Shown: positions 1,272 to 27,364, counted from the stretch's first letter. The stretch is DNA of 64,000 bases from IMGVR_UViG_3300013093_000017:1-64000, one strand, 5' to 3'. A program made the numbers and translations. Notes: generated by a model not told the origin, from the letters alone.

Positions 1272-1297
1272 AAACCCGCTCCGGCGGGTTTTTCTTT
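1272..1297 (+). terminator. Rho-independent terminator
   Basis: AAACCCGC-TCCG-GCGGGTTT followed by a T tract. Confidence 0.85.
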
Positions 1298-1324
1298 GAC
1301 TAAATCACAACTTACTGTTATACT
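1296..1324 (+). promoter_or_regulatory. sigma70-type promoter with extended -10
   Basis: TTGACT-N17-TATACT with TG upstream of the -10; implies the glycosyltransferase starts at ATG 1350, not TTG 1296. Confidence 0.75.
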
Positions 1325-1349
1325 ATATCATATAATTAAATATCCGTAT

Positions 1350-4300
1350 ATGAAAACAATCAAAATAGCAATATTAGACTGCGTAGGACTCAACTATGAT
1401 GGCACTACATTAAAGAAAAAGGGGATTGGCGGCAGCGAAAGCTCTATCATTTCCATTGCTCCTGAACTGGTTAAACTAGGTTTTGAAGTAACTATATTCA
1501 ATGACTGCGATACCAGTGAAACTAGCCCGGGTGTATATGACGGTGTTACCTACTATCCTATGCGCACACTTGGCCTGCGCAACTTTAACTTTGATATTGT
1601 TATTAGCCAACGTACTATTATACCATTTACCCCAGAACACCTGTATGATCAAGTTAGACAGCCGCCGCCTCGTGATTATGATCCAAAATGGTTCCATCAA
1701 TTACAACGTCCAACACAGTTAAAGATCCTTTGGCAGCAGGATACATTCATATGGGGTGACCACTTACTAGAACCGTTGATACTCAATGGGCATATCAACG
1801 AAGTGTTTAACATCAGTGATTGGCACATTGCTTACACTACTAACTCTTCACACGGTCCTCGTAGAAACTTTGAAGTATTAAAGAATCACGTGTTCAACAC
1901 ACGCAATGCTATCAATCGTTGGATTGATTGGGTAGATGTCAAGGCCAAAGATCCTAATCTATTTGTCTACAACGCTAGTGTGACCAAAGGCATGGAACCT
2001 TTAGTCCGTGATATATGGCCTAAACTTAAACAACAGTTACCTAATGCCCGATTAAAGATCATCGGCGGATACTACAACTTCCGTGATCAAGCAGTTAACG
2101 AAGCCAACGAAAAAGTAATCGCCCTGCAAAAATTAACTGCCAACGACCCAAGTGTAGAATTTACTGGTATTATTCCGCAACCTGAAATTGCTGCAATTAT
2201 GGCTCAGGCCAGTTATAATCTATTCCCTGGTGCGTTTCCAGAGACCAGCGGCATCAGCACAATCGAAAGCATCAACTACAATACTCCTATTCTAGGTGTA
2301 CGTTTTGGTGCTATGGAAGAAAGCGGAACTGACAGCGCCAGCTATTACATTGACTATGCTATTGAACCTAACGGATTGTTTCCGTGGATCAATAAAGATT
2401 GGCAGGTAGACCGCTATGTGCGTATGGTCTTAGACGCAGTTAACAATCCCTATCTACATCAACAAAAACAATATGCTTGTAATAATGTTAAAGATGTATC
2501 AACTTGGGATACTGTGGCCCTACAATGGAAACAACACTTCTACAAGTGGATGGGAATGGCACTTGATGCCAGTGAACAGGCTCGAGTAGATTGGATTAAC
2601 TATCGCGTGCGTAAGGTGTTTGGTCGTAGAATTGCCAACACAGAGGACATTATACAGGTTGCCAAGAACACTGATCCTATTCCACTTAACCAACCTCGAG
2701 TCAAAGTAGCCTACATTGATATTGTAGGTATGGCCTATGATGGAGATACATTAAATCGTAAAGGTATGGGCGGTAGTGAAAGCGCAGTTATTCTATCAGC
2801 ACAGGAAATGGCCAAGATAGGATTTGATGTTACTGTGTTTAATGCCTGTGATGAGGATGATAACAAGCCCGGAGTATATAACGGTGTACGCTATCGCCCA
2901 TTAAGTGAATTAGCACAAGCTGACGTATATGATATTGTTATTAGTTCGCGAGTAGTAACCCCATTTATAACAGAGCCGTTCTATCAATATCCGCAGACAA
3001 CCAATCGTAAAGTTGATTACGAAATCTTTAAACAGATACGTGAGCAGGCCCAATTAAAAGTATTTTGGATGCACGATACTTTTTGTTGGGGCGATGATAT
3101 CCTAGAAGAGTTAGTAGTCAGTGGAGCCATTGATGAAATATGGACATTAAGTGATTTCCACACCATGTACATTATGAACTGTAGTCATCCTCGTATGCGT
3201 AACTATGAAGTACTGCGTAACCATGTGTTCACCACACGCAATGGTATTGTCAAATACTTTGATAGTGTAGACCTGGATAGTAAAGATCCTAATATGTACA
3301 TCTTCAATGCTAATATGAGTAAGGGACTTGATCCTCTACTTAATCTAGTATGGCCAAGAGTTAAACAACGTTTACCTAATGCACGCTTAACTGTGATTGG
3401 CGGACATTATAAATTAGGTGCTGCATTTTCACACAATGACGAAGAATCAGAATTTATGAAAATGGTGGGACCGCACCTAACTGATCCTACTATCACATTC
3501 ACGGGAATTATTAAACAAGAACAAGTGGCCAACTTATCAGCCAAGGCCAGTTACTTTATCTATCCTGCAGGCCTCCCTGAAACCTATAGTATCAGCGCAG
3601 TTGAGTCATTATATGCTAACACGCCTTTACTGACCTGCCGCTTTGGCGCCTTAGAGGAAACAGCAGGACCGCATAGTTATATGATTGATTATGCTATAGT
3701 ACCTAACGGTCTGTTTCCTAATATCAATTCGGAAGAGCAAGCTGATAAGTTTGTGGACATGGTTGTTAAGGCCTATAACAATCCCACTGAGCATAGAACA
3801 CGCATGCGTGCATTAGATGATATTAAAGATATCGTAGGATGGGAAGTAACTGCTCTAGAGTGGAAGCATCATATCTACAGTAAACTAGGTCTATACTTAA
3901 GTCCTAGTGAAAGTCAACGGGTAAGATATACCAAGGCCAAATATCATCAAGTGTTTGGCCGTAGATACACAACACCAGAAGAGTGTCTGGCTCCTAAACA
4001 AGCAGTTGAACAAAAGATTGTAGTTGTTAGTCCGTTCTTCAATGCACGAGATTATGTTGAACGTTGCATTGCCAGCGTGGCAGCACAGGATTATGAAAAC
4101 TACGAACACTGGTTGATCGACGATGTTAGTTTTGACGGAGCCCGTGAAGTTGCAGAGGATTATATTGCCGATCTACCTGCTGATATACGAGGAAAGTTTA
4201 AGTTAATTAGAAATAGTGATAACCAAGGGGCAGGATACAACTATGTACAGGCAATCCGTGGTCAAAGTCCCGATACCATCGTCTTGATGCTAGACGGAGA

Positions 4301-6032
4301 TGACTGTTTAGTAAATCGTCCAGATGTGTTTGACTACTACAATAAGTTACATCAGGACTATGACTTTACCTATGGCAGTTGTTGGAGCATAGTTGACGGT
4401 ATTCCTCTACAGGCACAACCTTATCCTCCTGAAGTTAAAGCAGCAAAAGCCTACAAGGATTATAAATTTAATTGGAACTTACCGTATACTCACCTGCGTA
4501 CAATGAAAGCAGGATTATTAAACGGAGTATCGGATAGTAAATTCCGAGATGCAGATGGCAACTGGTTTAAAGCAGGTAACGATCTTGCTATATTCTATGC
4601 CGCAATAGAAAATGTAGATCCGGATAGAGTATACGCAGTATCTGATATTGTGTGTAATTACAACGATGCTAGTCCCTTAAATGACTATAAAATACATCGA
4701 GACGAACAAGATCGTACCATTGCCTCAGTCTTGGCCAATGACGATAAGAAGTATTCAGTAGTTGTTCCAACCATGTGGCGTGTTAATGATATGTTCTTAC
4801 CATTCCTTGGTCGTTTATGTAATGAGAATCTAGTTGATGAGATTATTATTATCAACAATGACAACACACGTACTCCGCAGGGGTTAACTCATCCTAAGAT
4901 TAAGATACACGACTTTGGCAAAAACATATATGTAAATCCTGCGTGGAACTTTGGAGTACGTAGCAGTCAAAATGATCGCGTGTGTATCCTTAGTGATGAT
5001 GTAGTGTTTGATACTAATCTGTTTGATAAGTTAAAAGATCTATTAACTGTTGATGCGGGTGTATTTGGATTATGTCCAGGAGATCCTGTATGGAATCAAC
5101 CACCTATCACTGATAAGACTATTGATATCATTCCGTGGACAGGTCAGCATACCTTAGGCTATGGATGTCTAATGTTTATAAACAAAAACAATTGGACTGA
5201 TATCCCGGATGGATTAAACATCTACTACGGTGATAACTTTATATTTGATTTTCAATTAGGTGCAGGTAGAACAAATTATCTAATCACTAATATGGATTTT
5301 GAAACACCAATGGCTGCTACATTGATTACCATACCCGAAGTTACCAAAGGTATGATGGAAGCAGAAACTCTAGTATATGATCAAGTGAAAGCCAATATGC
5401 TCACTCCTAAGGCACCTAAACAATTGAAAAAGATATTAATTGCAATACCTACAAATAGGAATATTGAAGCACAGACATTTAAGAGTATATACGATCTAAT
5501 TACTCCAGATGGGTGTGAAGTTGCCTTCCAATACTTTTGGGGATACCAAGTAGATCAAGTACGCAATCTAATTGCAGACTGGACCTTGCGTAATGGGTTT
5601 GATTATTTGTTCTGTGTGGATAGTGACATAGCGTTTCCGCCCGACACACTATTAAAATTAATGAGCCACAATAAAGATATTGTTAGCGGAGTGTACATTC
5701 AACGCATACCAGGTACACATACAATTGAGATAATGCGAAAAAATCCTTGGGGTGGAGTAACGCATGTTAACTGGGATGATATCAAAGGACAAGGACTAGT
5801 GCCAATTGATGGCTGCGGGTTTGGCTGTGTGTTGATTGATACTAAAGTATTACAGGCTATACCGTATCCGCACTTTCTATATCATAGTGCAATTGATCAT
5901 GCAAATACAGTAAGTGAAGATGTACATTTCTGTAATCAAGCACGGGATCATGGATTTAGTCTATGGTGTGATACCAGCATAACCTGCGAGCATATTGGAT
6001 CTAGCACATTCAGGGTTGGACAGATTACATAA
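1350..6032 (+). CDS. Five-domain glycosyltransferase (2x GT-B/GT4-like + 3x GT-A/GT2-like)
   Basis: Duplicated module (KGIGGSES / KGMGGSES; PETSGISTIES / PETYSISAVES), then VVSPFFNA...LDGDD, VVVPTMW...SDD and IAIPT...DSD...GCGFGCVLI...SEDVHFC. Confidence 0.85.
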   Translation: MKTIKIAILDCVGLNYDGTTLKKKGIGGSESSIISIAPELVKLGFEVTIFNDCDTSETSPGVYDGVTYYPMRTLGLRNFNFDIVISQRTIIPFTPEHLYDQVRQPPPRDYDPKWFHQLQRPTQLKILWQQDTFIWGDHLLEPLILNGHINEVFNISDWHIAYTTNSSHGPRRNFEVLKNHVFNTRNAINRWIDWVDVKAKDPNLFVYNASVTKGMEPLVRDIWPKLKQQLPNARLKIIGGYYNFRDQAVNEANEKVIALQKLTANDPSVEFTGIIPQPEIAAIMAQASYNLFPGAFPETSGISTIESINYNTPILGVRFGAMEESGTDSASYYIDYAIEPNGLFPWINKDWQVDRYVRMVLDAVNNPYLHQQKQYACNNVKDVSTWDTVALQWKQHFYKWMGMALDASEQARVDWINYRVRKVFGRRIANTEDIIQVAKNTDPIPLNQPRVKVAYIDIVGMAYDGDTLNRKGMGGSESAVILSAQEMAKIGFDVTVFNACDEDDNKPGVYNGVRYRPLSELAQADVYDIVISSRVVTPFITEPFYQYPQTTNRKVDYEIFKQIREQAQLKVFWMHDTFCWGDDILEELVVSGAIDEIWTLSDFHTMYIMNCSHPRMRNYEVLRNHVFTTRNGIVKYFDSVDLDSKDPNMYIFNANMSKGLDPLLNLVWPRVKQRLPNARLTVIGGHYKLGAAFSHNDEESEFMKMVGPHLTDPTITFTGIIKQEQVANLSAKASYFIYPAGLPETYSISAVESLYANTPLLTCRFGALEETAGPHSYMIDYAIVPNGLFPNINSEEQADKFVDMVVKAYNNPTEHRTRMRALDDIKDIVGWEVTALEWKHHIYSKLGLYLSPSESQRVRYTKAKYHQVFGRRYTTPEECLAPKQAVEQKIVVVSPFFNARDYVERCIASVAAQDYENYEHWLIDDVSFDGAREVAEDYIADLPADIRGKFKLIRNSDNQGAGYNYVQAIRGQSPDTIVLMLDGDDCLVNRPDVFDYYNKLHQDYDFTYGSCWSIVDGIPLQAQPYPPEVKAAKAYKDYKFNWNLPYTHLRTMKAGLLNGVSDSKFRDADGNWFKAGNDLAIFYAAIENVDPDRVYAVSDIVCNYNDASPLNDYKIHRDEQDRTIASVLANDDKKYSVVVPTMWRVNDMFLPFLGRLCNENLVDEIIIINNDNTRTPQGLTHPKIKIHDFGKNIYVNPAWNFGVRSSQNDRVCILSDDVVFDTNLFDKLKDLLTVDAGVFGLCPGDPVWNQPPITDKTIDIIPWTGQHTLGYGCLMFINKNNWTDIPDGLNIYYGDNFIFDFQLGAGRTNYLITNMDFETPMAATLITIPEVTKGMMEAETLVYDQVKANMLTPKAPKQLKKILIAIPTNRNIEAQTFKSIYDLITPDGCEVAFQYFWGYQVDQVRNLIADWTLRNGFDYLFCVDSDIAFPPDTLLKLMSHNKDIVSGVYIQRIPGTHTIEIMRKNPWGGVTHVNWDDIKGQGLVPIDGCGFGCVLIDTKVLQAIPYPHFLYHSAIDHANTVSEDVHFCNQARDHGFSLWCDTSITCEHIGSSTFRVGQIT

Positions 6033-18559: not shown

Positions 18560-19162
18560 ATGAGTTTTGATAAGTTCATAGTCGTAGACGACTTTATCCC
18601 TCTTTCATTGCAAGAAGAAATTAAAGGAAATTTAATTGGTAAATCTGAGGGACACGGTTTTCCTTGGTTTTATACAAATGATATAACATACGGAGTACAT
18701 GCAAAAAATTCTGAAAGAAATCCTGCATTTAGTCATTTGTTTAAAGTAGGCGATAAGGTAGTTTCGCCACATTTTAGTTTTGTTGCAGGATTAGCACATA
18801 TTGGCGCAGGGCTAGTTGATTTTAATTTTAAGAGTATTATACAAGCTAGAGCATTTATACAACTACCTTTAGAGTCTAGCTTTAAGAGAGCTGAAACTGA
18901 TCTATTACATATTGACTCAATTGATCCTCATCTAGTAGTACTATATTATGTTGTAGATGCTGACGGTGATACCTTATTAACAGATACTAAGTATACTCCT
19001 GGCGAAGAAGATCGTTGGGATATGAAAGTTGAAGATCATAATGTTATTGCTAGAGTTACTCCAAAACAAGGTCGTGCGTTAATATTTGACGGAAGCTATT
19101 ATCATACTGCCGAGCAACCTACAAACAGTTTAAGATGTGTTATCAATTTTGATGTTGCATAA
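18560..19162 (+). CDS. 2OG-Fe(II) oxygenase-like protein
   Basis: H-x-D (LHID), VLYYV, distal His (YHTAE), RCVINF. Confidence 0.75.
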   Translation: MSFDKFIVVDDFIPLSLQEEIKGNLIGKSEGHGFPWFYTNDITYGVHAKNSERNPAFSHLFKVGDKVVSPHFSFVAGLAHIGAGLVDFNFKSIIQARAFIQLPLESSFKRAETDLLHIDSIDPHLVVLYYVVDADGDTLLTDTKYTPGEEDRWDMKVEDHNVIARVTPKQGRALIFDGSYYHTAEQPTNSLRCVINFDVA

Positions 19163-19204
19163 ACATCTAACAATAAAAATAGTAAATTATAAAAGGAAAA
19201 TTAA

Positions 19205-19489
19205 ATGTTAATAAGCAAAGGTTTTACACAAGGTGATGTAGTAAGTTTAAAGTTAGTTAACGGTGATGAAATTATCGCACGTTTTGAATCGCAAACAACG
19301 GACTCTGTGACCATCAATCGTCCACTAGCGTTGACCATGAGTAATAATGGATTAGGTATGATCCCATGGTGCTTCTTAGGTGAAGATGACAAAATCACTA
19401 TCAACAAATCAAATACATTCTTTATAGTGGCCAGCAAAGCAGATGCTGCCAAGCAATATCTAGAAGGCACCACCGGCCTAACACTATAA
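19205..19489 (+). CDS. Small beta-rich protein, possible Sm-like fold
   Basis: VVSLKLVNGDEIIARF pattern resembles the Sm1 motif. Confidence 0.45.
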   Translation: MLISKGFTQGDVVSLKLVNGDEIIARFESQTTDSVTINRPLALTMSNNGLGMIPWCFLGEDDKITINKSNTFFIVASKADAAKQYLEGTTGLTL

Positions 19490-19492
19490 ATA
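19485..19492 (+). promoter_or_regulatory. T4-type late promoter
   Basis: Exact TATAAATA. Variants (N)TAAATA precede many genes, e.g. near 6030, 7001, 7555, 8929, 12071, 19594, 41502, 48592. Confidence 0.7.
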
Positions 19493-19496
19493 TCTT

Positions 19497-19585
19497 ACCC
19501 CGGTAGAGGCATGATCGCATAGCGTTCAGCATAGGTGAGAGACCTATGGGCTTGGTAACGGCCACACACGCTCTAAGGGGTTACC
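19497..19585 (+). ncRNA. Unidentified structured RNA
   Basis: ACCCC/GGGGT and TAGAG/CTCTA closing stems, GCGT/ACGC, CATAGGT-GAGAG-ACCTATG hairpin; GC-rich island in an AT-rich intergenic region. Confidence 0.5.
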
Positions 19586-19625
19586 TATTAAACGATAAAT
19601 AAAGCATAATGTACAGGAATACACG

Positions 19626-19922
19626 ATGGCAACAATATTAGAAAATGGTGATATAAAATTCGGTGACGGCACAACCCTTGCATCTGCTAATATTCCCTAT
19701 GCTAACATTACGGGAAAGAAAACTAATTTAACTCAATTTACTAACAATCTCGGAAATTATGGAGATCCTACATACGGTGCTTTCTTGGTAGCTGCAAATA
19801 TTAATACCGCTGCTATCGGCACAGGAGCATTTGCTAGTATGGCAATAAATGCAAATGTAACAACAGGTGCACTGTTTTTGACTACAAATAATTGTAACTG
19901 TAATTGTAACTGTAATTGCTAG
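19626..19922 (+). CDS. (Asn-Cys)-tail protein 1, putative radical-SAM substrate
   Basis: Shared leader (NGxIxFGDGT...QFTNxLGNYG) and C-terminal (NC)5. Confidence 0.8.
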   Translation: MATILENGDIKFGDGTTLASANIPYANITGKKTNLTQFTNNLGNYGDPTYGAFLVAANINTAAIGTGAFASMAINANVTTGALFLTTNNCNCNCNCNC

Positions 19923-19933
19923 GAAAATAAAAT

Positions 19934-20212
19934 ATGTCAACACAATTAGGAAACGGTAATATTACATTTGGCGACGGAACAACGTTATCGTCTGCTAATG
20001 TTGCCTGGACCGCAGTAAGCGGAGTTCCTACTGCTCTAAATCAATTTACAAATAACCTAGGCAACTATGGTGGTTTTTTAACATCAGCAAATGTAAACTC
20101 AGCTTACTCTGGATATTATGCATATAATGAGGTTGGGTACAAATGGTTAAATTGGAACGGATCGCAGTGGCAAATAATATCACCAAATTGTAACTGTAAT
20201 TGTAACTGTTAG
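19934..20212 (+). CDS. (Asn-Cys)-tail protein 2
   Basis: Same leader, C-terminal (NC)4. Confidence 0.8.
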   Translation: MSTQLGNGNITFGDGTTLSSANVAWTAVSGVPTALNQFTNNLGNYGGFLTSANVNSAYSGYYAYNEVGYKWLNWNGSQWQIISPNCNCNCNC

Positions 20213-20226
20213 GAAAATAACAAAAT

Positions 20227-20550
20227 ATGTCAGCAAATATAGGAAACGGTAATATCACATTCGGCGATGGTACGTCTACAAGTACCAACGTATTCTTGTG
20301 GTCTTCAGTTGCGTCACATCCAACTACATTAAGTCAATTTACAAACGACCTAGGTAACTATGGTGGTTTTTTAACAGCAGCAAACGCATTGGCCGGAGCA
20401 AACTTAGATAACAGCAACGGAGTTATTACTAATTGCGGAAGTAGACGAGGCGGAGTCGGACACTTAACATCAGGTGCATGGGGTCTAACATGGAACGGAT
20501 CTACTATGAATTTGAAATGCTATAATTGTAATTGCGCATGTAATTGCTAA
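20227..20550 (+). CDS. (Asn-Cys)-tail protein 3
   Basis: Same leader, C-terminal CYNCNCACNC. Confidence 0.8.
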   Translation: MSANIGNGNITFGDGTSTSTNVFLWSSVASHPTTLSQFTNDLGNYGGFLTAANALAGANLDNSNGVITNCGSRRGGVGHLTSGAWGLTWNGSTMNLKCYNCNCACNC

Positions 20551-20568
20551 TATTAAGAGGAAAAAAAT

Positions 20569-21354
20569 ATGGATTTTATTAAATTAAGTACAACAAGAAC
20601 ATTAACAACTAATAATGTTTCTATTAATGGCGATACATTGACACTTGAAATAGTTGATGCAACCGTTAATGATCTTATTGGAACTACTAATGCAACAGGC
20701 ACATTTAGTCTATCAGAGCTGATATCAACTTATTCACAGGACCACGGTTGCATTGCGTTATTTCCAAAAGCAATGCACATTGGTGAAATGCAAGACTTTA
20801 TGCCTATGGAAACTACTCAACTTTCATTAAATGAAAGAGCAGGTGGCGACCCGGGTTCTATACAACAAAAAACAACAGTAACACCGGCGGCAGCGGGCAA
20901 AGAATATCCAGGCTCTCCTTGGTCAGTTATTAATAGCAGATACGCATCTTATTCATACCTATACATATTAACACCGTATGCAGGATGTTCAGTTGATGAA
21001 ATAACTATTGTATATCGTGATAGTGCTCCGGTAGTTACAAAAGATAGTCAAGAAGTTACACCAGCCCAATCAATCCTATCAATGAAAGTATTCCTTAATT
21101 CATGGTTACCAATAACAGTTGCCGGCCCTGATACTATTACTCTAGGACAAACTGCTACCTACACAGTAACAGCACCTGCAAATACTACAGTGTATGTATC
21201 TAGTGATATTGGCATTGTTAATAGAGCTCGTGTTGCTCCTGGAAAAACATTTATATTAAACACAGATGGTTTAGAGGTTGGCGAAACTGTAACAATTAAA
21301 GCAGGTTACAAATTTTGGGCAGGCGTAACTAAAAAAACTATTACAGTATCATAA
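20569..21354 (+). CDS. Hypothetical protein with Ig-like C-terminal domain
   Basis: GAGGA RBS; VAGPDTITLGQTATYTVTAP. Confidence 0.65.
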   Translation: MDFIKLSTTRTLTTNNVSINGDTLTLEIVDATVNDLIGTTNATGTFSLSELISTYSQDHGCIALFPKAMHIGEMQDFMPMETTQLSLNERAGGDPGSIQQKTTVTPAAAGKEYPGSPWSVINSRYASYSYLYILTPYAGCSVDEITIVYRDSAPVVTKDSQEVTPAQSILSMKVFLNSWLPITVAGPDTITLGQTATYTVTAPANTTVYVSSDIGIVNRARVAPGKTFILNTDGLEVGETVTIKAGYKFWAGVTKKTITVS

Positions 21355-21414
21355 ATCAGAAAGCAATTATCACCGTTATATAGATAGTAAATACAGTTTT
21401 GGAATGAATCAAAC

Positions 21415-22056
21415 ATGAGTATACTATCTATATGGCCCACCAATATCCTGTATGAACCACAGGCGATCGAGGCAACTCCTCAGTTTTTGTCAGGAATGAT
21501 AGAGATAGGCGAGGAGTACGAAAAACACCATCCTGAAGCACATGTTCCTTATTATATGCGTAAGAGTCAAGAGACTGCTTACAACCTATTAGCAGATCCT
21601 CGACCATTTTGTCAAACATTTAAACAAATGCTAAAAGATCGAATGATAGAACTTGCTAAATTGGAAGGATTTGCTAAACCTGAAGAAGTTAAGTTTGAAG
21701 CAATCACTAGTCTACGCAAATTTGGACCTCAAGAATATGCCAAACCTCATAACCACAGAAGTGTAGACTATGTGTCAGTATTGTATCTATCATTGGAAGT
21801 AACCGATTTTCCTGGAAATAATACTCATCAAACGATGGCAGGTAATAGATTACACATAATTGATCCTACTGCTGCTAGAAGCAGATTACTAAATCATAGT
21901 ATGTTATTTCCAATAAGTCCGTTGCCAGGAACATTTATTGTACATCCTGCATCAATCTTTCATACTACTGAATTGAACTTAGGCCTAGCTGACACTATAG
22001 CCTTAGTTACTAACATTAAAGTAGTTGAAACTGTAAGAAACTACGTTACCTTATAA
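21415..22056 (+). CDS. 2OG-Fe(II) oxygenase family protein
   Basis: PHNH...VSVLY, PGTFIVHPASIFH. Confidence 0.75.
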   Translation: MSILSIWPTNILYEPQAIEATPQFLSGMIEIGEEYEKHHPEAHVPYYMRKSQETAYNLLADPRPFCQTFKQMLKDRMIELAKLEGFAKPEEVKFEAITSLRKFGPQEYAKPHNHRSVDYVSVLYLSLEVTDFPGNNTHQTMAGNRLHIIDPTAARSRLLNHSMLFPISPLPGTFIVHPASIFHTTELNLGLADTIALVTNIKVVETVRNYVTL

Positions 22057-22077
22057 ACCTAACCAAGAAGAAGAAAA

Positions 22078-23451
22078 ATGGCAAAATTTAGAATTAGATG
22101 TGTTACCCCCGTCACCAACGAAGAAAAAGAATTTTGGTATGACAATTTAAGTTCATTAGTATTTGATGCTACTGGGCAAATTATTAACTTTGGTAATACA
22201 GCAGATACCTCTTACCAATCAGCACCCGTTGTAAGTAAAGATACTCCGCTAGGCAAAAGCCACGATATTAAAATACTCAAAATACAATTAGGTTTATCCT
22301 GCAACTACGAGTGTACATATTGTAGTCAACGATTTGTTCCTAAGGCTGATGAAACTAATCTTAATGATATAGACCCGTTCCTTGAACAGTTACCAACTTG
22401 GTTTAACGGTGGAGATGGATCAGATGTTAAAGTGGAATTTTGGGGTGGCGAACCGTTTGTTTATTGGAAAACCCTTAAACCGTTAGCTGACCGCATTAAA
22501 GAAATGTATCCTAATATTACATTTTCAGTTGTTACTAATGGTACCATTCTCGATCTAGAAAAGAATGAATGGCTTGATAAGTTAGGATTTAATGTTGGAA
22601 TTAGCCACGACGGCCCCGGTTATCATGTACGAGGATTAGATCCGTTTGACAATCCAGAGCAGTTGTCTATGATCATAGACCTATGGAATCGTATTGGTGC
22701 CCAAGGTCGCATGAGCTTTAATGCTATGTTACATAAAGATAACCCAAGTCGCGCGGCAATTGTTGATTGGTTTGTAGAAAGATTAGGATTTGAGCCGCCA
22801 ATAGGTGAAGGCAGTTTTATTGATCCGTACGACGAAGGTGGAGTAAGTTTGTGTATGAATGAGGTTTCTGAACATATCACATACCGTAGTAATAGTTTTG
22901 CTGAGTTACGAGCAGGAAAAGGTGTTAATGTTTCATCTGCACAACGTAAAATTAAAGACTTTATTAAAAGTATCATGACTCAGCGGCCTGCTAGTACATT
23001 AGGACAAAAATGCGGAATGGATAATCCGGATAATATTGCTGTAGATTTAAAGGGCAATGTATTAACATGCCAAAACGTAAGTCCGGTTGCTACTAGCTTT
23101 AATGGTGAAAGCCATTTAATTGGACACGTTAGTGATTTTGACAACATTAAACTTAAAACATCTACACATTGGAGTCATCGTGAAGAATGTCCTAACTGCC
23201 CTGTATTACAAATATGTCAAGGTAGCTGTATGTTCTTAGCAGGTGATATGTGGGAACTAGCATGTGATAATGCTTACAGCGACAATGTTCCATATTTTAT
23301 GGCAGCATGGGAAATGTTAACAGGTACTATTCCTTATTACATTGATGGTCCGCAGGCAGAAGATCGCAAAGATATCATCGGAGCGGTACACGGCATTCCG
23401 GAAACTACTCCAAAACGTAAACCATTTCCAATCCCGGTAGTTGCAGGATAG
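22078..23451 (+). CDS. Radical SAM/SPASM domain enzyme
   Basis: CNYECTYC, FWGGEP, VTNGT, ISHDG; SPASM CGMD...CQNV...CPNCPVLQICQGSC...C. Confidence 0.92.
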   Translation: MAKFRIRCVTPVTNEEKEFWYDNLSSLVFDATGQIINFGNTADTSYQSAPVVSKDTPLGKSHDIKILKIQLGLSCNYECTYCSQRFVPKADETNLNDIDPFLEQLPTWFNGGDGSDVKVEFWGGEPFVYWKTLKPLADRIKEMYPNITFSVVTNGTILDLEKNEWLDKLGFNVGISHDGPGYHVRGLDPFDNPEQLSMIIDLWNRIGAQGRMSFNAMLHKDNPSRAAIVDWFVERLGFEPPIGEGSFIDPYDEGGVSLCMNEVSEHITYRSNSFAELRAGKGVNVSSAQRKIKDFIKSIMTQRPASTLGQKCGMDNPDNIAVDLKGNVLTCQNVSPVATSFNGESHLIGHVSDFDNIKLKTSTHWSHREECPNCPVLQICQGSCMFLAGDMWELACDNAYSDNVPYFMAAWEMLTGTIPYYIDGPQAEDRKDIIGAVHGIPETTPKRKPFPIPVVAG

Positions 23452-23666
23452 AAGTTAAATAACTAATAGCGATCCCGATATCTGCCATTCTCGTATCCCG
23501 ACCGTTACTGAATGGAGATAACAATGAAAAAGTTTCTAATATTACTAGCAGTATTAATTGCCAGGCCAACACTACCTTTCCTTATATCGATATAAAATCA
23601 AAGTATAATACTGTTACATATTATTAACATCTCTAGTGTTAAATACCATTAACCAGGGAGATAAGT

Positions 23667-24071
23667 ATGAACAAGATATTAATACTAGTATTGGCATTAT
23701 TCTCTTTCACAGCATTTGCAGAGGAAGATGGTATAGAGCTCACAGAGTTATATGCTAAGAACGACGCAAACGGCTACATCGTAATAACAATCAAACCATG
23801 CTCGAATACTGCATGGGCTAAGAAATATCCAAACGAAGCGTATGCTACAGAAGCTAATGGTACTACGCACGCAGGCTGCTGGGATCGCCCAGATACAAGT
23901 GCTGCACCAAAAGTACCAGATGTAACAATCGTTCCTATAGTGAATACCATATGGGAAGATGGCAGCAAGTATACTTTTCCAGCAAATATCTTTGGCCTAA
24001 AAGATCATGAAGATACCGTCAACGAAAAGATACCAGAGGGCAGTGTACCTCCAGTTAAAGGAACTTTATGA
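23667..24071 (+). CDS. Secreted hypothetical protein
   Basis: Signal peptide ending AFA; one Cys pair. Confidence 0.65.
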   Translation: MNKILILVLALFSFTAFAEEDGIELTELYAKNDANGYIVITIKPCSNTAWAKKYPNEAYATEANGTTHAGCWDRPDTSAAPKVPDVTIVPIVNTIWEDGSKYTFPANIFGLKDHEDTVNEKIPEGSVPPVKGTL

Positions 24072-24367
24072 TGAATTATATTGCAGGATTGATATTATTA
24101 GTAGCAAGTATTACAGCCTGGGCGCAGACATACATGGTGTTTGAATACAACGCAAATGCTCGCATAGTCCTAGGACAGGGCAGTTGTCTAGTACAAGGGC
24201 TTACGGGAGCTCGTGCCAGTGTACAACGCAATGATGGTAAGTTTATCCGCGGATGCTGGCAGTTCATTGACAACGATGCACATGTGAAGATAGAGTGGGA
24301 GAACCCCGCCAAACCCGGTGACTTTGCTATATTAAACGCCAAGGATTTCCATCCGGTTGACGAATAA
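24068..24367 (+). CDS. Secreted hypothetical protein
   Basis: Signal peptide ending AWA; shares a GCW motif with the upstream protein. Confidence 0.65.
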   Translation: MMNYIAGLILLVASITAWAQTYMVFEYNANARIVLGQGSCLVQGLTGARASVQRNDGKFIRGCWQFIDNDAHVKIEWENPAKPGDFAILNAKDFHPVDE

Positions 24368-24795: not shown

Positions 24796-25572
24796 TTACA
24801 GGGTCTTCGGACCCTGTTCTTTTGATAATTTATTCTGTTTTCTAGTCTCTAACATTTTTTTGACAGATTCAGGATTTTTCATAGGATTTAATCGACTGTC
24901 GCCAAATCCTGTATCAGATTTTCCTTTATTCCACGCAGGTGCTACCCTGTTGTGCTTTTTTCCAACTTGCGATGGGCGTATTTTGGCCTGATATCGATTC
25001 CGGCAAGTCGCATTGCAATAGTAATGTTCTTTAGGTGAATGATGGCAAAACTCTTCATAGATTAATTCAGCATTACAGTTAGTACACTTATAATATCGGA
25101 GTTCTTTTGGTTTCTTTTTTGTTTTATTAATTTCTCGCATTATTTCTGCTTGCCGACTTCTTCTTTCATCCGATGCAGATACCCAAGATCGTTTAGCCTG
25201 CAATCCGTCTGCATTATGATTATTTGATATCATATAGGCAATGTGCTCTTTGCGAACAATTTCATAACATTTAGAATTATTACGTTTTAATCGATCACAC
25301 ATAAGTTTAAAGGCCTGTGATTGCTTGCCACCGTATGCTTTCCATAATAATCTATGGGCAACATAATGTTGTCGTAGGGTTAATGCTGCTTTATTCCAGG
25401 GATATTTCTTAAATGATTTAAATTCTGGGAATAAATCAGACGATTTAGGGCATATATGATGATCTTCAGTTTCAAGTAGATGAGTAGTAACAATGCATTG
25501 ATTAATAAATTTAATATATCTATTAAGGTAATGTGAATTATGAGGTTTAGATTTTAATATATCAGCAAACAT
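24796..25572 (-). mobile_element. Free-standing HNH homing endonuclease (Mob-like)
   Basis: HHICPK...N...LTLRQHYVAHRLL; CxxC...CxxxC; TATAAATA on the minus strand at 25593-25600. Confidence 0.8.
24798..24823. terminator. Terminator overlapping the HNH gene 3' end
   Basis: ACAGGGTC-TTCG-GACCCTGT followed by a T tract. Confidence 0.8.

Positions 25573-25720: not shown

Positions 25721-27364
<1,644 letters not shown>

What the first reader, a model, noticed from the sequence alone, without database searches (positions are those of the whole stretch)
19594..23451. RiPP-like module: three (Asn-Cys)n-tailed paralogues with a 2OG-Fe oxygenase and a radical SAM/SPASM enzyme
Seen: three tandem 92-107 aa genes share a leader of about 55 aa (NGxIxFGDGT...TxLxQFTNxLGNYG..FL..AN). 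Each has a divergent middle and ends in (NC)5, (NC)4 or CYNCNCACNC. They follow a late-promoter motif and are co-oriented with an unknown protein, a 2OG-Fe(II) oxygenase and a radical SAM enzyme with a complete SPASM Cys set. Established: SPASM radical SAM enzymes install Cys-to-carbon thioethers (sacti/ranthipeptides) on leader-bearing substrates, and 2OG oxygenases hydroxylate Asn/Asp. Inference: the phage cross-links or modifies the NC tails. The leader resembles tail-fibre repeat motifs (ITFxDGT, PTxLSQFTND), so the products may be modified virion mini-fibres with variable tips rather than secreted peptides. I know of no described phage system of this kind.
Basis: partly seen in the sequence, partly recalled or inferred. 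Interest (0 to 1): 0.93.

Follow-up and report, generated by a model that had tools for sequence, protein, structure and literature searches.

The report
Radical-SAM cassette for cysteine-tipped phage fibres
A large uncultured phage encodes three small tail-fibre-tip proteins that end in an Asn-Cys ladder. Next to them are a dedicated radical-SAM enzyme and oxygenases that most likely modify that ladder chemically, and the same gene pairing, not described in the papers I could search, recurs across many environmental phages.

Summary
Three tandem genes (98, 92 and 107 aa) share an N-terminal ~57 aa and end in NCNCNCNCNC, NCNCNCNC and CYNCNCACNC. Downstream lie a 261-aa beta-sandwich protein, a 213-aa oxygenase-like protein and a radical SAM enzyme with a complete, invariant SPASM cysteine set.

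Comparative genomics backs the link. Of 70 phage ORFs ending in (NC)>=4, 56 have a homologue of this enzyme in the fetched locus, all on the same strand. For NC runs elsewhere the figure is 1 of 50.

The shared "leader" is not a RiPP leader. It matches an internal segment of longer, bona fide tail fibres that carry the same tail.

In relatives the cysteine repeat is followed by a stop codon, a self-cleaving Hint domain or a Peptidase_S74 chaperone. The mature fibre would therefore usually end at the repeat, although one class carries a ~170-aa C-terminal domain of unknown nature.

My best reading is a fibre-tip maturation cassette: thioether cross-linking of the Cys ladder plus Asn/Asp hydroxylation. 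The genetic coupling is shown; the chemistry is inferred.

The three paralogues are an ancient triplet, one of each per phage, so a heterotrimer is possible. I found no published description. The late-promoter claim is not supported.

The parts
18560..19162 (+). Second oxygenase (200 aa), a probable upstream member of the cassette
   Evidence: Pfam hits are weak: Asp_Arg_Hydrox at 3.8e-3 and 2OG-FeII_Oxy_3 at 0.015, both below cut-off. PHROG 274 scores 3.8e-28, although PHROGs annotates that family as 'DNA endonuclease V'. H-I-D ... H ... R residues are visible in the sequence (printout). A 53-54% identical orthologue lies directly upstream of the three NC genes in L115, L116 and L141. Related copies occur in L007 and L055.
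19485..19492 (+). Exact TATAAATA octamer (T4-type late-promoter consensus); significance doubtful
   Evidence: There are 3 copies in the window against 9.5 expected. It overlaps the stop codon of the unrelated 94-aa ORF at 19205-19489.
19626..19922 (+). NC1: 98-aa fibre-tip protein. The (NC)5 tail is encoded at 19890-19919.
   Evidence: It falls in the 'NC1-type' orthologous clade (100/92 support).
19934..20212 (+). NC2: 92-aa fibre-tip protein. The (NC)4 tail is encoded at 20186-20209.
   Evidence: Residues 9-51 are 58% identical to residues 297-333 of a 393-aa tail-fibre protein in L114 (E 4e-11). The AF2 monomer model is extended and non-globular.
20227..20550 (+). NC3: 107-aa fibre-tip protein. 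The NCNCACNC tail is encoded at 20524-20547.
   Evidence: Residues 25-103 align with residues 200-271 of a 284-aa fibre-like protein in L113 (E 8e-12).
20569..21354 (+). 261-aa all-beta protein with a C-terminal Ig-like domain ('F4' family). It is a conserved partner encoded right after the Cys-tailed protein; its function is unknown.
   Evidence: No Pfam, NCBIfam or PHROG hit. It is homologous to RSP15 ORF047 (1e-9) and to the gene following the Cys-tail gene in 21 of 57 loci. The AF2 model has pLDDT 73.7 and pTM 0.70. PDB matches are generic Ig folds only. BFVD matches are uncharacterised phage proteins only, with TM 0.5-0.72.
21415..22056 (+). 213-aa Fe(II)-oxygenase-like protein (PF13759 / PHROG 81 family, 'F1')
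   Evidence: PF13759 scores 19.4 bits, below the gathering score of 27; PHROG 81 scores 5e-8. Family members in related loci hit PF13759 at 1.4e-19. H112, H114 and H183 are invariant in 36 members. 42 of 57 related loci carry at least one oxygenase.
22078..23451 (+). 457-aa radical SAM / SPASM enzyme, the invariant core enzyme of the cassette
   Evidence: PF04055 and TIGR04085 both score above cut-off. All ten cluster cysteines are invariant. The best curated family is the PapB ranthipeptide maturase, aligned over nearly the full length but at 62 bits against a 340-bit cut-off. PDB relatives are 8vpo, CteB (5wgg) and anSME (4k37). At least 3098 protein clusters match at E<=1e-20, and none shown carries an informative name.

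Best explanation
This is a phage cassette that matures fibre tips. NC1, NC2 and NC3 are stand-alone versions of the last ~95 residues of a tail fibre. Each has a conserved N-terminal segment that in other phages is continuous with the fibre shaft, a variable middle (the probable receptor-contacting part), and a C-terminal Asn-Cys ladder.

The SPASM radical SAM enzyme encoded downstream acts on that ladder. The most likely reaction joins cysteine sulfur to a carbon of a neighbouring residue or chain, giving thioether cross-links as ranthipeptide/sactipeptide maturases and QhpD do. The accompanying Fe(II) oxygenases would hydroxylate Asn/Asp side chains. The product would be a covalently stapled fibre tip that resists reduction and proteases.

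The 261-aa beta-sandwich protein is a conserved accessory, perhaps a chaperone, scaffold or adaptor.

Shown: the gene anatomy, the enzyme family, the statistical coupling of tail and enzyme, the tail-fibre homology, and the placement of the repeat at or near the mature C-terminus in most classes.

Inferred: that the enzyme modifies the tail, the type of bond, the hydroxylation, the oligomeric state and presence in the virion.
For: 1. Coupling, starting from the enzyme. Among 58 viral loci found with the enzyme, almost every locus with enough flank has a co-oriented ORF with an (xC)n repeat at or near its C-terminus. The usual order is fibre, Cys-tail protein, F4, oxygenase(s), rSAM.

2. Coupling, starting from the pattern. 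A scan for (AAYTGY)x4 in viral contigs gave 70 C-terminal NC tails. Of these, 56 have an rSAM homologue in the locus, 56 of 56 are on the same strand, and most lie 0-3.2 kb downstream. For internal or non-coding NC runs the figure is 1 of 50. Fisher p = 2e-19, or 3e-14 after removing duplicates.

3. Fibre identity. Cys-tailed proteins of 307-616 aa hit tail-fibre PHROGs, with E-values down to 2e-70. They follow a T7-type fibre gene (PF03906, 2e-35). The NC 'leader' aligns to an internal segment of longer fibres. In L004 the NC triplet closes a tail-fibre block and is followed, after the enzymes, by an endolysin.

4. The repeat is kept at the mature C-terminus by three routes. These are a stop codon 0-6 residues later, a Hint domain beginning at the last Cys (JWF gp28, 3e-12; L034), or a Peptidase_S74 self-cleaving chaperone domain just after it (L026).

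5. All 109 small homologues end in the repeat. Three Cys are invariant and two Asn are nearly so.

6. Enzyme type. The SPASM set is complete, with exactly seven conserved C-terminal Cys. From my own knowledge, this matches thioether-forming enzymes, which leave one site on an auxiliary cluster open for a substrate thiolate, better than the eight-Cys anSME. The best curated match is PapB.

7. Oxygenases recur: PF13759, PF13640 and a bona fide Asp/Asn beta-hydroxylase family hit (PF05118, 4e-14).
Against: - No chemistry was or could be tested here.
- The enzyme fails the curated cut-off of every named maturase family, so its reaction cannot be transferred by homology.
- The residue before each Cys is not strictly Asn. 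In a sample biased towards NC it is N 67%, A 15% and D 6%. An Asn-specific acceptor therefore cannot be general.
- In this window the cassette sits beside nucleotide-metabolism genes (nrdA, nrdB, glutaredoxin), not in an obvious tail module.
- The small proteins themselves have no direct tail-fibre family hit. The link is through longer homologues.
- The AF2 monomer model is uninformative (pTM 0.36).
- One class of Cys-repeat proteins ('F2') carries a ~170-aa C-terminal domain of unknown nature after the repeat, so 'always at the mature end' is not proven for all classes.
Confidence: 0.6

Rival explanations
1. The Cys ladder is a structural zipper in its own right. In a trimeric tip, the inward-facing cysteines would bind metal ions or form inter-chain disulfides after lysis, analogous to the His-x-His iron ladder of T4 gp37. 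The radical SAM enzyme would then do something other than C-S cross-linking on the same tail, for example Cys-to-formylglycine oxidation (anSME-like) or epimerisation of alternate residues (PoyD/YydG-like).
For: - The strict period-2 pattern, with Cys invariant and the partner residue variable, is what an inward/outward beta-strand ladder would give.
- A related small-protein class combines an H-T-H motif with the NC repeat (L070, L122, L138, L164).
- anSME is among the PDB and NCBIfam hits.
- Period-2 modification is known for proteusin epimerases (my own knowledge).
Against: - A pure zipper leaves the near-obligate, co-oriented rSAM unexplained.
- The anSME hits are partial and weaker than PapB.
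- Only seven, not eight, conserved SPASM-region cysteines are present.
- No epimerase family scored among the listed hits.
Confidence: 0.22
2. It is a true RiPP pathway. The three small proteins are precursors whose ~55-aa leader guides the enzymes, and the modified C-terminal peptides are released as diffusible products such as a bacteriocin, signal or anti-defence peptide.
For: - The proteins are small (92-107 aa) and occur as tandem paralogues with a conserved N-terminus and a Cys-rich C-terminus next to a SPASM enzyme, the classic RiPP layout.
- The best curated match of the enzyme is a ranthipeptide maturase.
Against: - The 'leader' is homologous to an internal segment of 284-393-aa fibres.
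- The same tail ends proteins of up to 616 aa with tail-fibre hits.
- No protease, exporter or RRE/PqqD domain was detected in the module.
- A 30-45-aa hypervariable stretch lies between the 'leader' and the 'core'.
- Relatives use Hint or S74 self-cleavage on the C-terminal side of the repeat, not the N-terminal side.
- In L004 the module lies in a tail-fibre and lysis block.
Confidence: 0.1
3. The adjacency is fortuitous. The radical SAM and oxygenase genes would be auxiliary metabolic genes unrelated to the NC proteins.
For: In this window the cassette neighbours nucleotide-metabolism genes. Marine phage genomes are known to carry many radical SAM genes of unknown role (PMC5332604).
Against: The association holds across enzyme identities from 100% down to ~40%. 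It holds in different phage types (a T7-like tail-fibre gene neighbourhood, Ackermannviridae per the RSP15 record, siphovirus JWF, and this 230-kb phage). It also holds in a search that started from the peptide pattern alone (p = 2e-19).
Confidence: 0.02

Closest known systems
Ranthipeptide/sactipeptide maturases (PapB, CteB, NxxcB-type SPASM radical SAM enzymes)
   Same: Both have a radical SAM core plus a full 7-Cys SPASM domain. Both act on a Cys-rich substrate encoded next to the enzyme. PapB is the best curated hit, aligned over residues 65-385, and CteB is among the PDB hits. NxxcB links Cys to the Asn beta-carbon (my own knowledge).
   Different: The score is 62 bits against a 340-bit cut-off, so this is not a family member. 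No RRE domain was detected. The substrate is the C-terminal end of a structural fibre protein of 90-616 aa, not a leader-guided peptide. The motif is xC with period 2, not Cx3D or NxxC. The system lies in phage tail-fibre gene modules in relatives.
QhpD and the gamma subunit of quinohemoprotein amine dehydrogenase
   Same: A SPASM radical SAM enzyme installs several Cys-to-Asp/Glu thioethers in a small protein (~80-110 aa) that stays part of a larger assembly. This is protein maturation rather than peptide natural-product synthesis (my own knowledge). The family appears among the hits at 5e-11.
   Different: The score is 41.8 bits against a 453-bit cut-off. QhpD is a bacterial periplasmic redox-enzyme system with no repeat ladder, and has nothing to do with virions.
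His-x-His iron ladder of the phage T4 gp37 needle, with similar motifs in other fibre tips
   Same: Both are period-2 repeats of a metal- or bond-forming residue at the distal end of a trimeric fibre, which suggests an inward-facing ladder that locks the three chains (my own knowledge of the gp37 structure).
   Different: The residue here is Cys rather than His. The His ladder needs no dedicated enzyme, whereas here a radical SAM enzyme and oxygenases are genetically obligatory.
Intramolecular chaperone (Peptidase_S74) and Hint self-cleaving C-terminal domains of tail fibres and spikes
   Same: They are found directly after the Cys repeat in relatives, as in endosialidase-type fibres where the domain is cut off after trimer folding.
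   Different: The window's proteins have neither domain and simply stop after the repeat. In the relatives these domains appear to serve to expose the repeat as the new C-terminus.
Aspartyl/asparaginyl beta-hydroxylase acting on Cys-rich EGF domains
   Same: An Fe(II)/2OG hydroxylase family (PF05118) sits in the same cassette as Asn/Asp-Cys repeats (4e-14 in L024; weak hit for 18560-19162).
   Different: The connection is a family-level resemblance only. The substrate motif differs and no activity was tested.

Membership tests
Radical SAM superfamily (PF04055) | CX3CX2C motif binding the SAM-cleaving [4Fe-4S] cluster, and a Pfam score above the gathering threshold | tested here: met
   C75-x3-C79-x2-C82 is invariant in 48 homologues. 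PF04055 scores 32.7 bits against a 29.5-bit cut-off.
SPASM subfamily (TIGR04085) | C-terminal seven-cysteine motif (C..GxxxxC .. CxxCxxxxxCxxxC .. C) for two auxiliary clusters | tested here: met
   C312, C331 (preceded by GNVLT), C371, C374, C380, C384 and C396 are all 100% conserved. TIGR04085 scores 33.7 bits against a 27-bit cut-off.
PapB-family ranthipeptide maturase (NF047865) | Score above the curated equivalog cut-off (340 bits) | tested here: not met
   62.4 bits.
PapB/CteB-type RiPP maturases | N-terminal RiPP recognition element (PqqD-like) that binds a leader peptide | tested here: not met
   No PqqD or RRE family appeared among the Pfam or NCBIfam hits. Only ~64 residues precede the core, which is too few for a canonical RRE (my own knowledge). 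A divergent RRE cannot be excluded without a structure.
Anaerobic sulfatase maturase (TIGR03942) | Score above cut-off (349 bits), and eight Cys fully ligating both auxiliary clusters | tested here: not met
   44.4 bits, and only residues 71-180 align. Seven, not eight, cysteines are conserved in the C-terminal half. The eight-Cys criterion is from my own knowledge.
QhpD (TIGR03906) | Score above cut-off (453 bits) | tested here: not met
   41.8 bits.
RiPP biosynthetic gene cluster | Precursor with a leader that is removed, plus a leader protease and/or exporter | tested here: not met
   The 'leader' is homologous to internal fibre segments. No protease or transporter family was found in 18560-24367. 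Actual cleavage cannot be tested here.
2OG-Fe(II) oxygenase, PF13759 (213-aa protein) | Pfam score above gathering (27 bits), and an H-x-D/E...H iron triad | tested here: inconclusive
   19.4 bits, below cut-off. However, PHROG 81 scores 5e-8 and homologues in related loci score 70.8 bits. The invariant ligand candidates read H112-x-H114...H183, not H-x-D.
2OG-Fe(II) oxygenase / Asp-Asn hydroxylase (200-aa protein at 18560-19162) | Pfam score above gathering, and an H-x-D...H triad plus a 2OG-binding Arg | tested here: inconclusive
   PF05118 scores 17.5 bits and PF13640 16.7 bits, both below cut-off. H-I-D, a distal H and an R are visible in the sequence (printout). PHROG 274 scores 3.8e-28, but that family is annotated 'DNA endonuclease V'.
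Phage tail fibre protein | Homology to recognised tail-fibre families | tested here: met
   This is met indirectly. NC2 and NC3 align to the C-terminal ~100 aa of proteins of 393 and 284 aa (4e-11 and 8e-12); the 393-aa one (L114) has tail-fibre PHROG hits, and other Cys-tailed proteins reach 2e-70. The small proteins alone give only one weak PHROG hit of unknown function.
Phage tail fibre protein | Presence in the virion and a trimeric fibrous fold | not testable with these tools
   No proteomics and no multimer prediction were available. The AF2 monomer model is extended, with pTM 0.36.

The most novel reading that the evidence does not exclude
Phages use radical chemistry to finish their receptor-binding fibres. 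A dedicated SPASM radical SAM enzyme would weld the Asn-Cys ladders of three different chains (NC1, NC2, NC3; one of each per genome) into a covalently cross-linked, hydroxylated heterotrimeric tip. As far as I know, this would be the first enzyme-installed C-S cross-link in any virion protein. The enzyme family has at least 3000 90%-identity protein clusters in public genome and metagenome data, and the related loci examined are largely viral.
Probability: 0.35. Interest if true: 0.92.

Novelty: new variant of a known kind. Interest (0 to 1): 0.85.

Why it matters
Tail-fibre tips decide which host a phage can infect. Their assembly is known to rely on chaperones, self-cleaving domains and metal ladders, but, to my knowledge, not on radical enzymology. 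If confirmed, this cassette would have several consequences:
- It would add a new class of post-translational modification to virion biology.
- It would give a function to a very large family of phage radical SAM genes with no informative name (at least 3098 clusters), and probably to some of the many orphan 2OG-type oxygenases of environmental phages.
- It would provide a new substrate class (period-2 xC repeats at a protein's C-terminus) for SPASM enzymology.
- It would offer a compact, genetically encoded way to staple protein trimers.

It is directly testable by co-expression in E. coli and by mass spectrometry.

Tried and rejected
- **Megablast of the region against phage records:** no match. 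Relatives had to be found at protein level.
- **Family scans of the three small proteins and the 261-aa protein (Pfam, NCBIfam, PHROGs):** nothing usable.
- **AF2 model of NC2 with a 106-sequence alignment:** extended chain, pTM 0.36, tail at pLDDT 38. It is too poor for a fold search and cannot address trimers.
- **AF2 model of the 261-aa protein:** decent quality (pTM 0.70). It matches only generic Ig folds in PDB (TM ~0.22) and uncharacterised phage proteins in BFVD, so no function was gained.
- **BLASTP of the 213-aa protein against the genes at the same position in RSP15 and JWF:** no similarity. The oxygenase slot is filled by different families in different phages.
- **T4-type late promoter:** the octamer is under-represented in the window, so I rejected it as evidence.
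- **Terminator scan:** no + strand terminator after the rSAM gene.
- **Genome scan of bacterial and archaeal species with the single protein:** only 4 loci, which says little about bacterial distribution.
- **Automated Trp-in-tail versus Trp-halogenase test:** too crude, because it counted Trp upstream of the repeat. I kept the point only as a passing observation after reading the tails directly.
- **Eight literature searches and four paper look-ups:** no description of Cys-repeat fibres with a radical SAM enzyme. The library lacks most subscription journals, so this absence is not proof of novelty.

Full report
**What is in the window**

Between 19626 and 23451 six + strand genes lie head to tail. 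The first three encode proteins of 98, 92 and 107 aa.
- Their first ~57 residues align well, with the pattern GNGxITFGDGT ... PTxLxQFTNxLGNYG ... FL..AN. Their middles differ.
- They end in NCNCNCNCNC, NCNCNCNC and CYNCNCACNC.
- Gaps between the genes are 11-18 nt, and each gene is preceded by a purine-rich stretch that could serve as a ribosome-binding site.
- In all six frames of the 64-kb window, (NC)>=2 occurs only at these three places. (NC)>=3 never arose in 100 simulated sequences.

The next three genes are as follows.
- **261-aa protein.** It has no family hit.
- **213-aa protein.** It resembles PF13759 oxygenases weakly (19.4 bits against a cut-off of 27) and PHROG 81 more clearly (5e-8).
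- **457-aa radical SAM enzyme.** Its CX3CX2C motif and seven SPASM cysteines are invariant in 48 homologues.

The claimed late promoter is not. One exact TATAAATA lies 134 nt upstream, but the octamer is under-represented in the window, with 3 copies against 9.5 expected.

**Origin**

The window is part of IMG/VR contig 3300013093_000017 (229,675 bp), a large uncultured phage. No phage record matches at DNA level. Upstream are ribonucleotide reductase genes and a glutaredoxin. Downstream are two small signal-peptide proteins and a GroEL-like chaperonin.

**The key test: do NC tails and the enzyme travel together?**

*Starting from the enzyme.* 58 viral loci encode a relative with 39-100% identity over most of its length, plus one weak 25% match. 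Six-frame scanning and gene-family clustering show a strong pattern. Almost every locus with enough flank has a co-oriented ORF carrying an (xC)n repeat at or near its C-terminus. The recurring order is fibre gene, Cys-tailed protein, homologue of the 261-aa protein, one to three oxygenases, rSAM, and often another oxygenase. The only full-flank loci where the repeat scan found nothing (L032 and L056) still have a Cys-rich segment in the gene just upstream of the enzyme.

*Starting from the peptide.* I scanned viral contigs for (AAYTGY)x4 with no reference to the enzyme.
- 70 hits are (NC)>=4 runs within 12 residues of the end of an ORF of at least 60 aa.
- 56 of those 70 have an rSAM homologue in the fetched locus. 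All 56 are on the same strand, and most lie 0-3.2 kb downstream.
- Of the 14 without the enzyme, 12 have less than 2.7 kb of downstream sequence.
- Among the 50 hits that are internal or lie in short non-coding frames, one has the enzyme.
- Fisher's exact test gives p = 2e-19, or 3e-14 after collapsing identical tails.

**What the Cys-tailed proteins are**

- Longer proteins with the same tail (307-616 aa) give tail-fibre and collagen-like-fibre PHROG hits, with E-values down to 2e-70.
- In T7-like contexts the Cys-tailed gene directly follows a gene with the T7 tail-fibre N-terminal domain (2e-35).
- In the cultured phages RSP15 and JWF, the enzyme (52% and 46% identical) lies two or three genes downstream of an annotated side tail fibre or a T4 gp36-like fibre.
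- The window's 'leader' is not specific to small proteins. NC2 residues 9-51 match residues 297-333 of a 393-aa fibre (58% identity, 4e-11). NC3 residues 25-103 match residues 200-271 of a 284-aa fibre-like protein (8e-12).

NC1-3 are therefore free-standing copies of the last ~95 residues of such fibres. In L004, whose enzyme is 73% identical, the same three small genes close a block of tail-fibre genes (1.7e-50 and 1.7e-13). After the accessory genes and the rSAM comes an endolysin.

**The repeat is kept at the mature C-terminus**

In most families the stop codon comes 0-6 residues after the last Cys. There are two other arrangements.
- In JWF gp28 and in L034, a Hint self-splicing domain begins at the last Cys (3e-12).
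- In L026-28, a Peptidase_S74 intramolecular chaperone begins just after the repeat. From my own knowledge, this domain cuts itself off trimeric fibres after folding.

These are three independent ways to leave the ladder at the very end of the mature fibre. They argue that a free, terminal ladder is what matters. One class ('F2', for example L024) has a further ~170 aa of unknown nature after the repeat and remains unexplained.

**The small-protein family**

A profile search found 109 proteins of 86-167 aa. All come from metagenomes and none carries an informative name. All 109 end in the repeat, with the consensus ...NCNCxCNC at the C-terminus. Three Cys are invariant and two Asn are nearly so.

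A maximum-likelihood tree shows that paralogues from one contig never group together. Instead there are three orthologous clades, with supports of 100/92 and 99/96 for two of them, and each phage carries one gene from each clade. It is verified directly for the window and for L004.

The triplication is therefore old and all three copies are retained. This fits three distinct fibres or, more intriguingly, one heterotrimer.

**The enzymes**

*The rSAM.*
- It passes the Pfam and SPASM cut-offs but fails the cut-off of every curated maturase family.
- Its best hit is the PapB ranthipeptide maturase, aligned over residues 65-385 at 62 bits against a 340-bit cut-off.
- Next come the geopeptide, Nif11-type, CcpM, anSME, QhpD and SCIFF maturases.
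- PDB relatives are 8vpo, CteB and anSME, all matching only over the N-terminal core.
- Exactly seven cysteines are conserved in the SPASM region. From my own knowledge, thioether-forming SPASM enzymes leave one auxiliary-cluster site free for the substrate thiolate, whereas anSME uses eight Cys. This favours C-S bond formation but is an inference.
- No RRE domain was detected.
- The family is large, with at least 3098 90%-identity clusters at E<=1e-20, and none shown carries an informative name.

*The oxygenases.*
- The 213-aa protein belongs to a family with 47 members in the related loci. Other members hit PF13759 at 1.4e-19.
- Other loci add PF13640 proteins and a clear Asp/Asn beta-hydroxylase family member (PF05118, 4e-14).
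- 42 of 57 loci have at least one such gene.
- In the 213-aa family the invariant ligand candidates are H112, H114 and H183. This is H-x-H...H rather than H-x-D...H, so '2OG-dependent' is not assured.
- A second oxygenase at 18560-19162 has H-x-D...H...R. In three relatives it sits directly upstream of the NC genes, so it probably belongs to the cassette. The 94-aa ORF between them (19205-19489) is absent from those relatives.

*The 261-aa protein.* It recurs immediately after the Cys-tailed gene. Its model is all-beta with a C-terminal Ig-like domain (pTM 0.70). It matches only uncharacterised phage proteins.

**Interpretation**

The coupling, the fibre homology and the terminal position of the ladder are shown. 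That the enzyme modifies the ladder is a strong inference from obligate co-oriented synteny and from what SPASM enzymes do.

The bond type is a weaker inference. I favour thioethers, with hydroxylation of Asn/Asp by the oxygenases. The residue before Cys is Asn in 67% of positions, Ala in 15% and Asp in 6%, in a sample biased towards NC. A strictly Asn-directed reaction therefore cannot be universal.

The rivals are:
- a metal or disulfide zipper, with a different radical reaction such as formylglycine formation or epimerisation;
- a true diffusible RiPP;
- chance adjacency.

**Novelty**

Eight searches and four paper look-ups in the held library found no description of this pairing. One paper notes many radical SAM genes of unknown role in marine T4-like genomes (PMC5332604). 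The enzyme type is known, but the substrate class and the virion context appear to be new.

Noticed in passing
L021, L026-L028, L031, L058 (for example L031:10257-11777): A flavin-dependent Trp-halogenase family gene (PF04820, 1.6e-92) lies 2-3 kb downstream of the rSAM in a subset of loci. In those loci the Cys tails end with Trp-containing motifs (..CDCWICACTW, ..CPWICACACW, ..DCFW before the S74 cut site). Tails in the other loci read lack Trp in their last residues. This suggests Trp tailoring of the same tip. One halogenase locus (L119) has no Trp in its tail.
   Followed up: partly
L002:3799-5250 (JWF gp28), L034:218-850, L026:6313-6990: In some relatives the Cys repeat is followed by a Hint domain that starts at the last Cys. 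In others it is followed by a Peptidase_S74 intramolecular chaperone. Either would expose the repeat as the new C-terminus after self-cleavage.
   Followed up: yes
window 19626-20550, and P0001-P0096: The three paralogues form three ancient orthologous clades, with one member of each per phage contig (tree). This fits a heterotrimer or three non-redundant tips.
   Followed up: partly
L185 (Ralstonia phage RP12, 80935-96122): The jumbo phage RP12 has three radical SAM genes in a row after virion structural genes. One is 26% identical to the window enzyme. They are preceded by ORF075, which gives a weak structural match to the 261-aa protein model, and by a 125-aa protein with H-T-H motifs but no NC tail.
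   Followed up: partly
L070, L078, L122, L138, L164: A separate class of 71-82-aa ORFs reads ..HTH(I/V)F(Y/F)DDY(S/G)T(A/N)C-NCNCNC.. In three of the five loci a distant rSAM (~26% identity) lies 1-7 kb away. The class combines a His-x-His motif with the NC ladder.
   Followed up: no
window 23380-23451 and the homologues' C-termini: Many rSAM homologues (30 of 48 by a loose pattern) end with a short basic-x-(I/F)-I-P-I-like motif after a variable linker. In the window this reads ..KPFPIPVVAG. It may be a docking peptide.
   Followed up: no
window 19205-19489: A 94-aa ORF (PHROG 527, function unknown) sits between the upstream oxygenase and NC1. It is absent at that position in relatives L115, L116 and L141, so it looks like an insertion into the cassette.
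   Followed up: partly
window 23667-24071 and 24068-24367: Two overlapping small ORFs (134 and 99 aa) with signal-peptide-like N-termini follow the rSAM gene. They have no homologue in any related locus.
   Followed up: partly
window 25745-27364; 1296-6032; 24796-25572 (- strand): The phage encodes a 539-aa protein whose sequence looks like a GroEL-type chaperonin (not scanned against any library), and a 1578-aa protein with two glycosyltransferase-like regions. It also has a lone minus-strand 258-aa Cys/His-rich ORF between the cassette and the chaperonin.
   Followed up: no
L181 (Limnohabitans sp. JirII-31, NZ_NESA01000007.1 43045-58397): A complete cassette lies inside a 202,852-bp contig of a Limnohabitans sp. 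JirII-31 whole-genome-shotgun assembly. It has a 190-aa Cys-tailed protein, a homologue of the 261-aa protein, three oxygenases and the rSAM. It is a possible prophage and, if the strain is in culture, an experimental handle.
   Followed up: partly
window, whole: The T4 late-promoter octamer TATAAATA is under-represented (3 copies against 9.5 expected). This phage probably does not use T4-type late promoters.
   Followed up: partly
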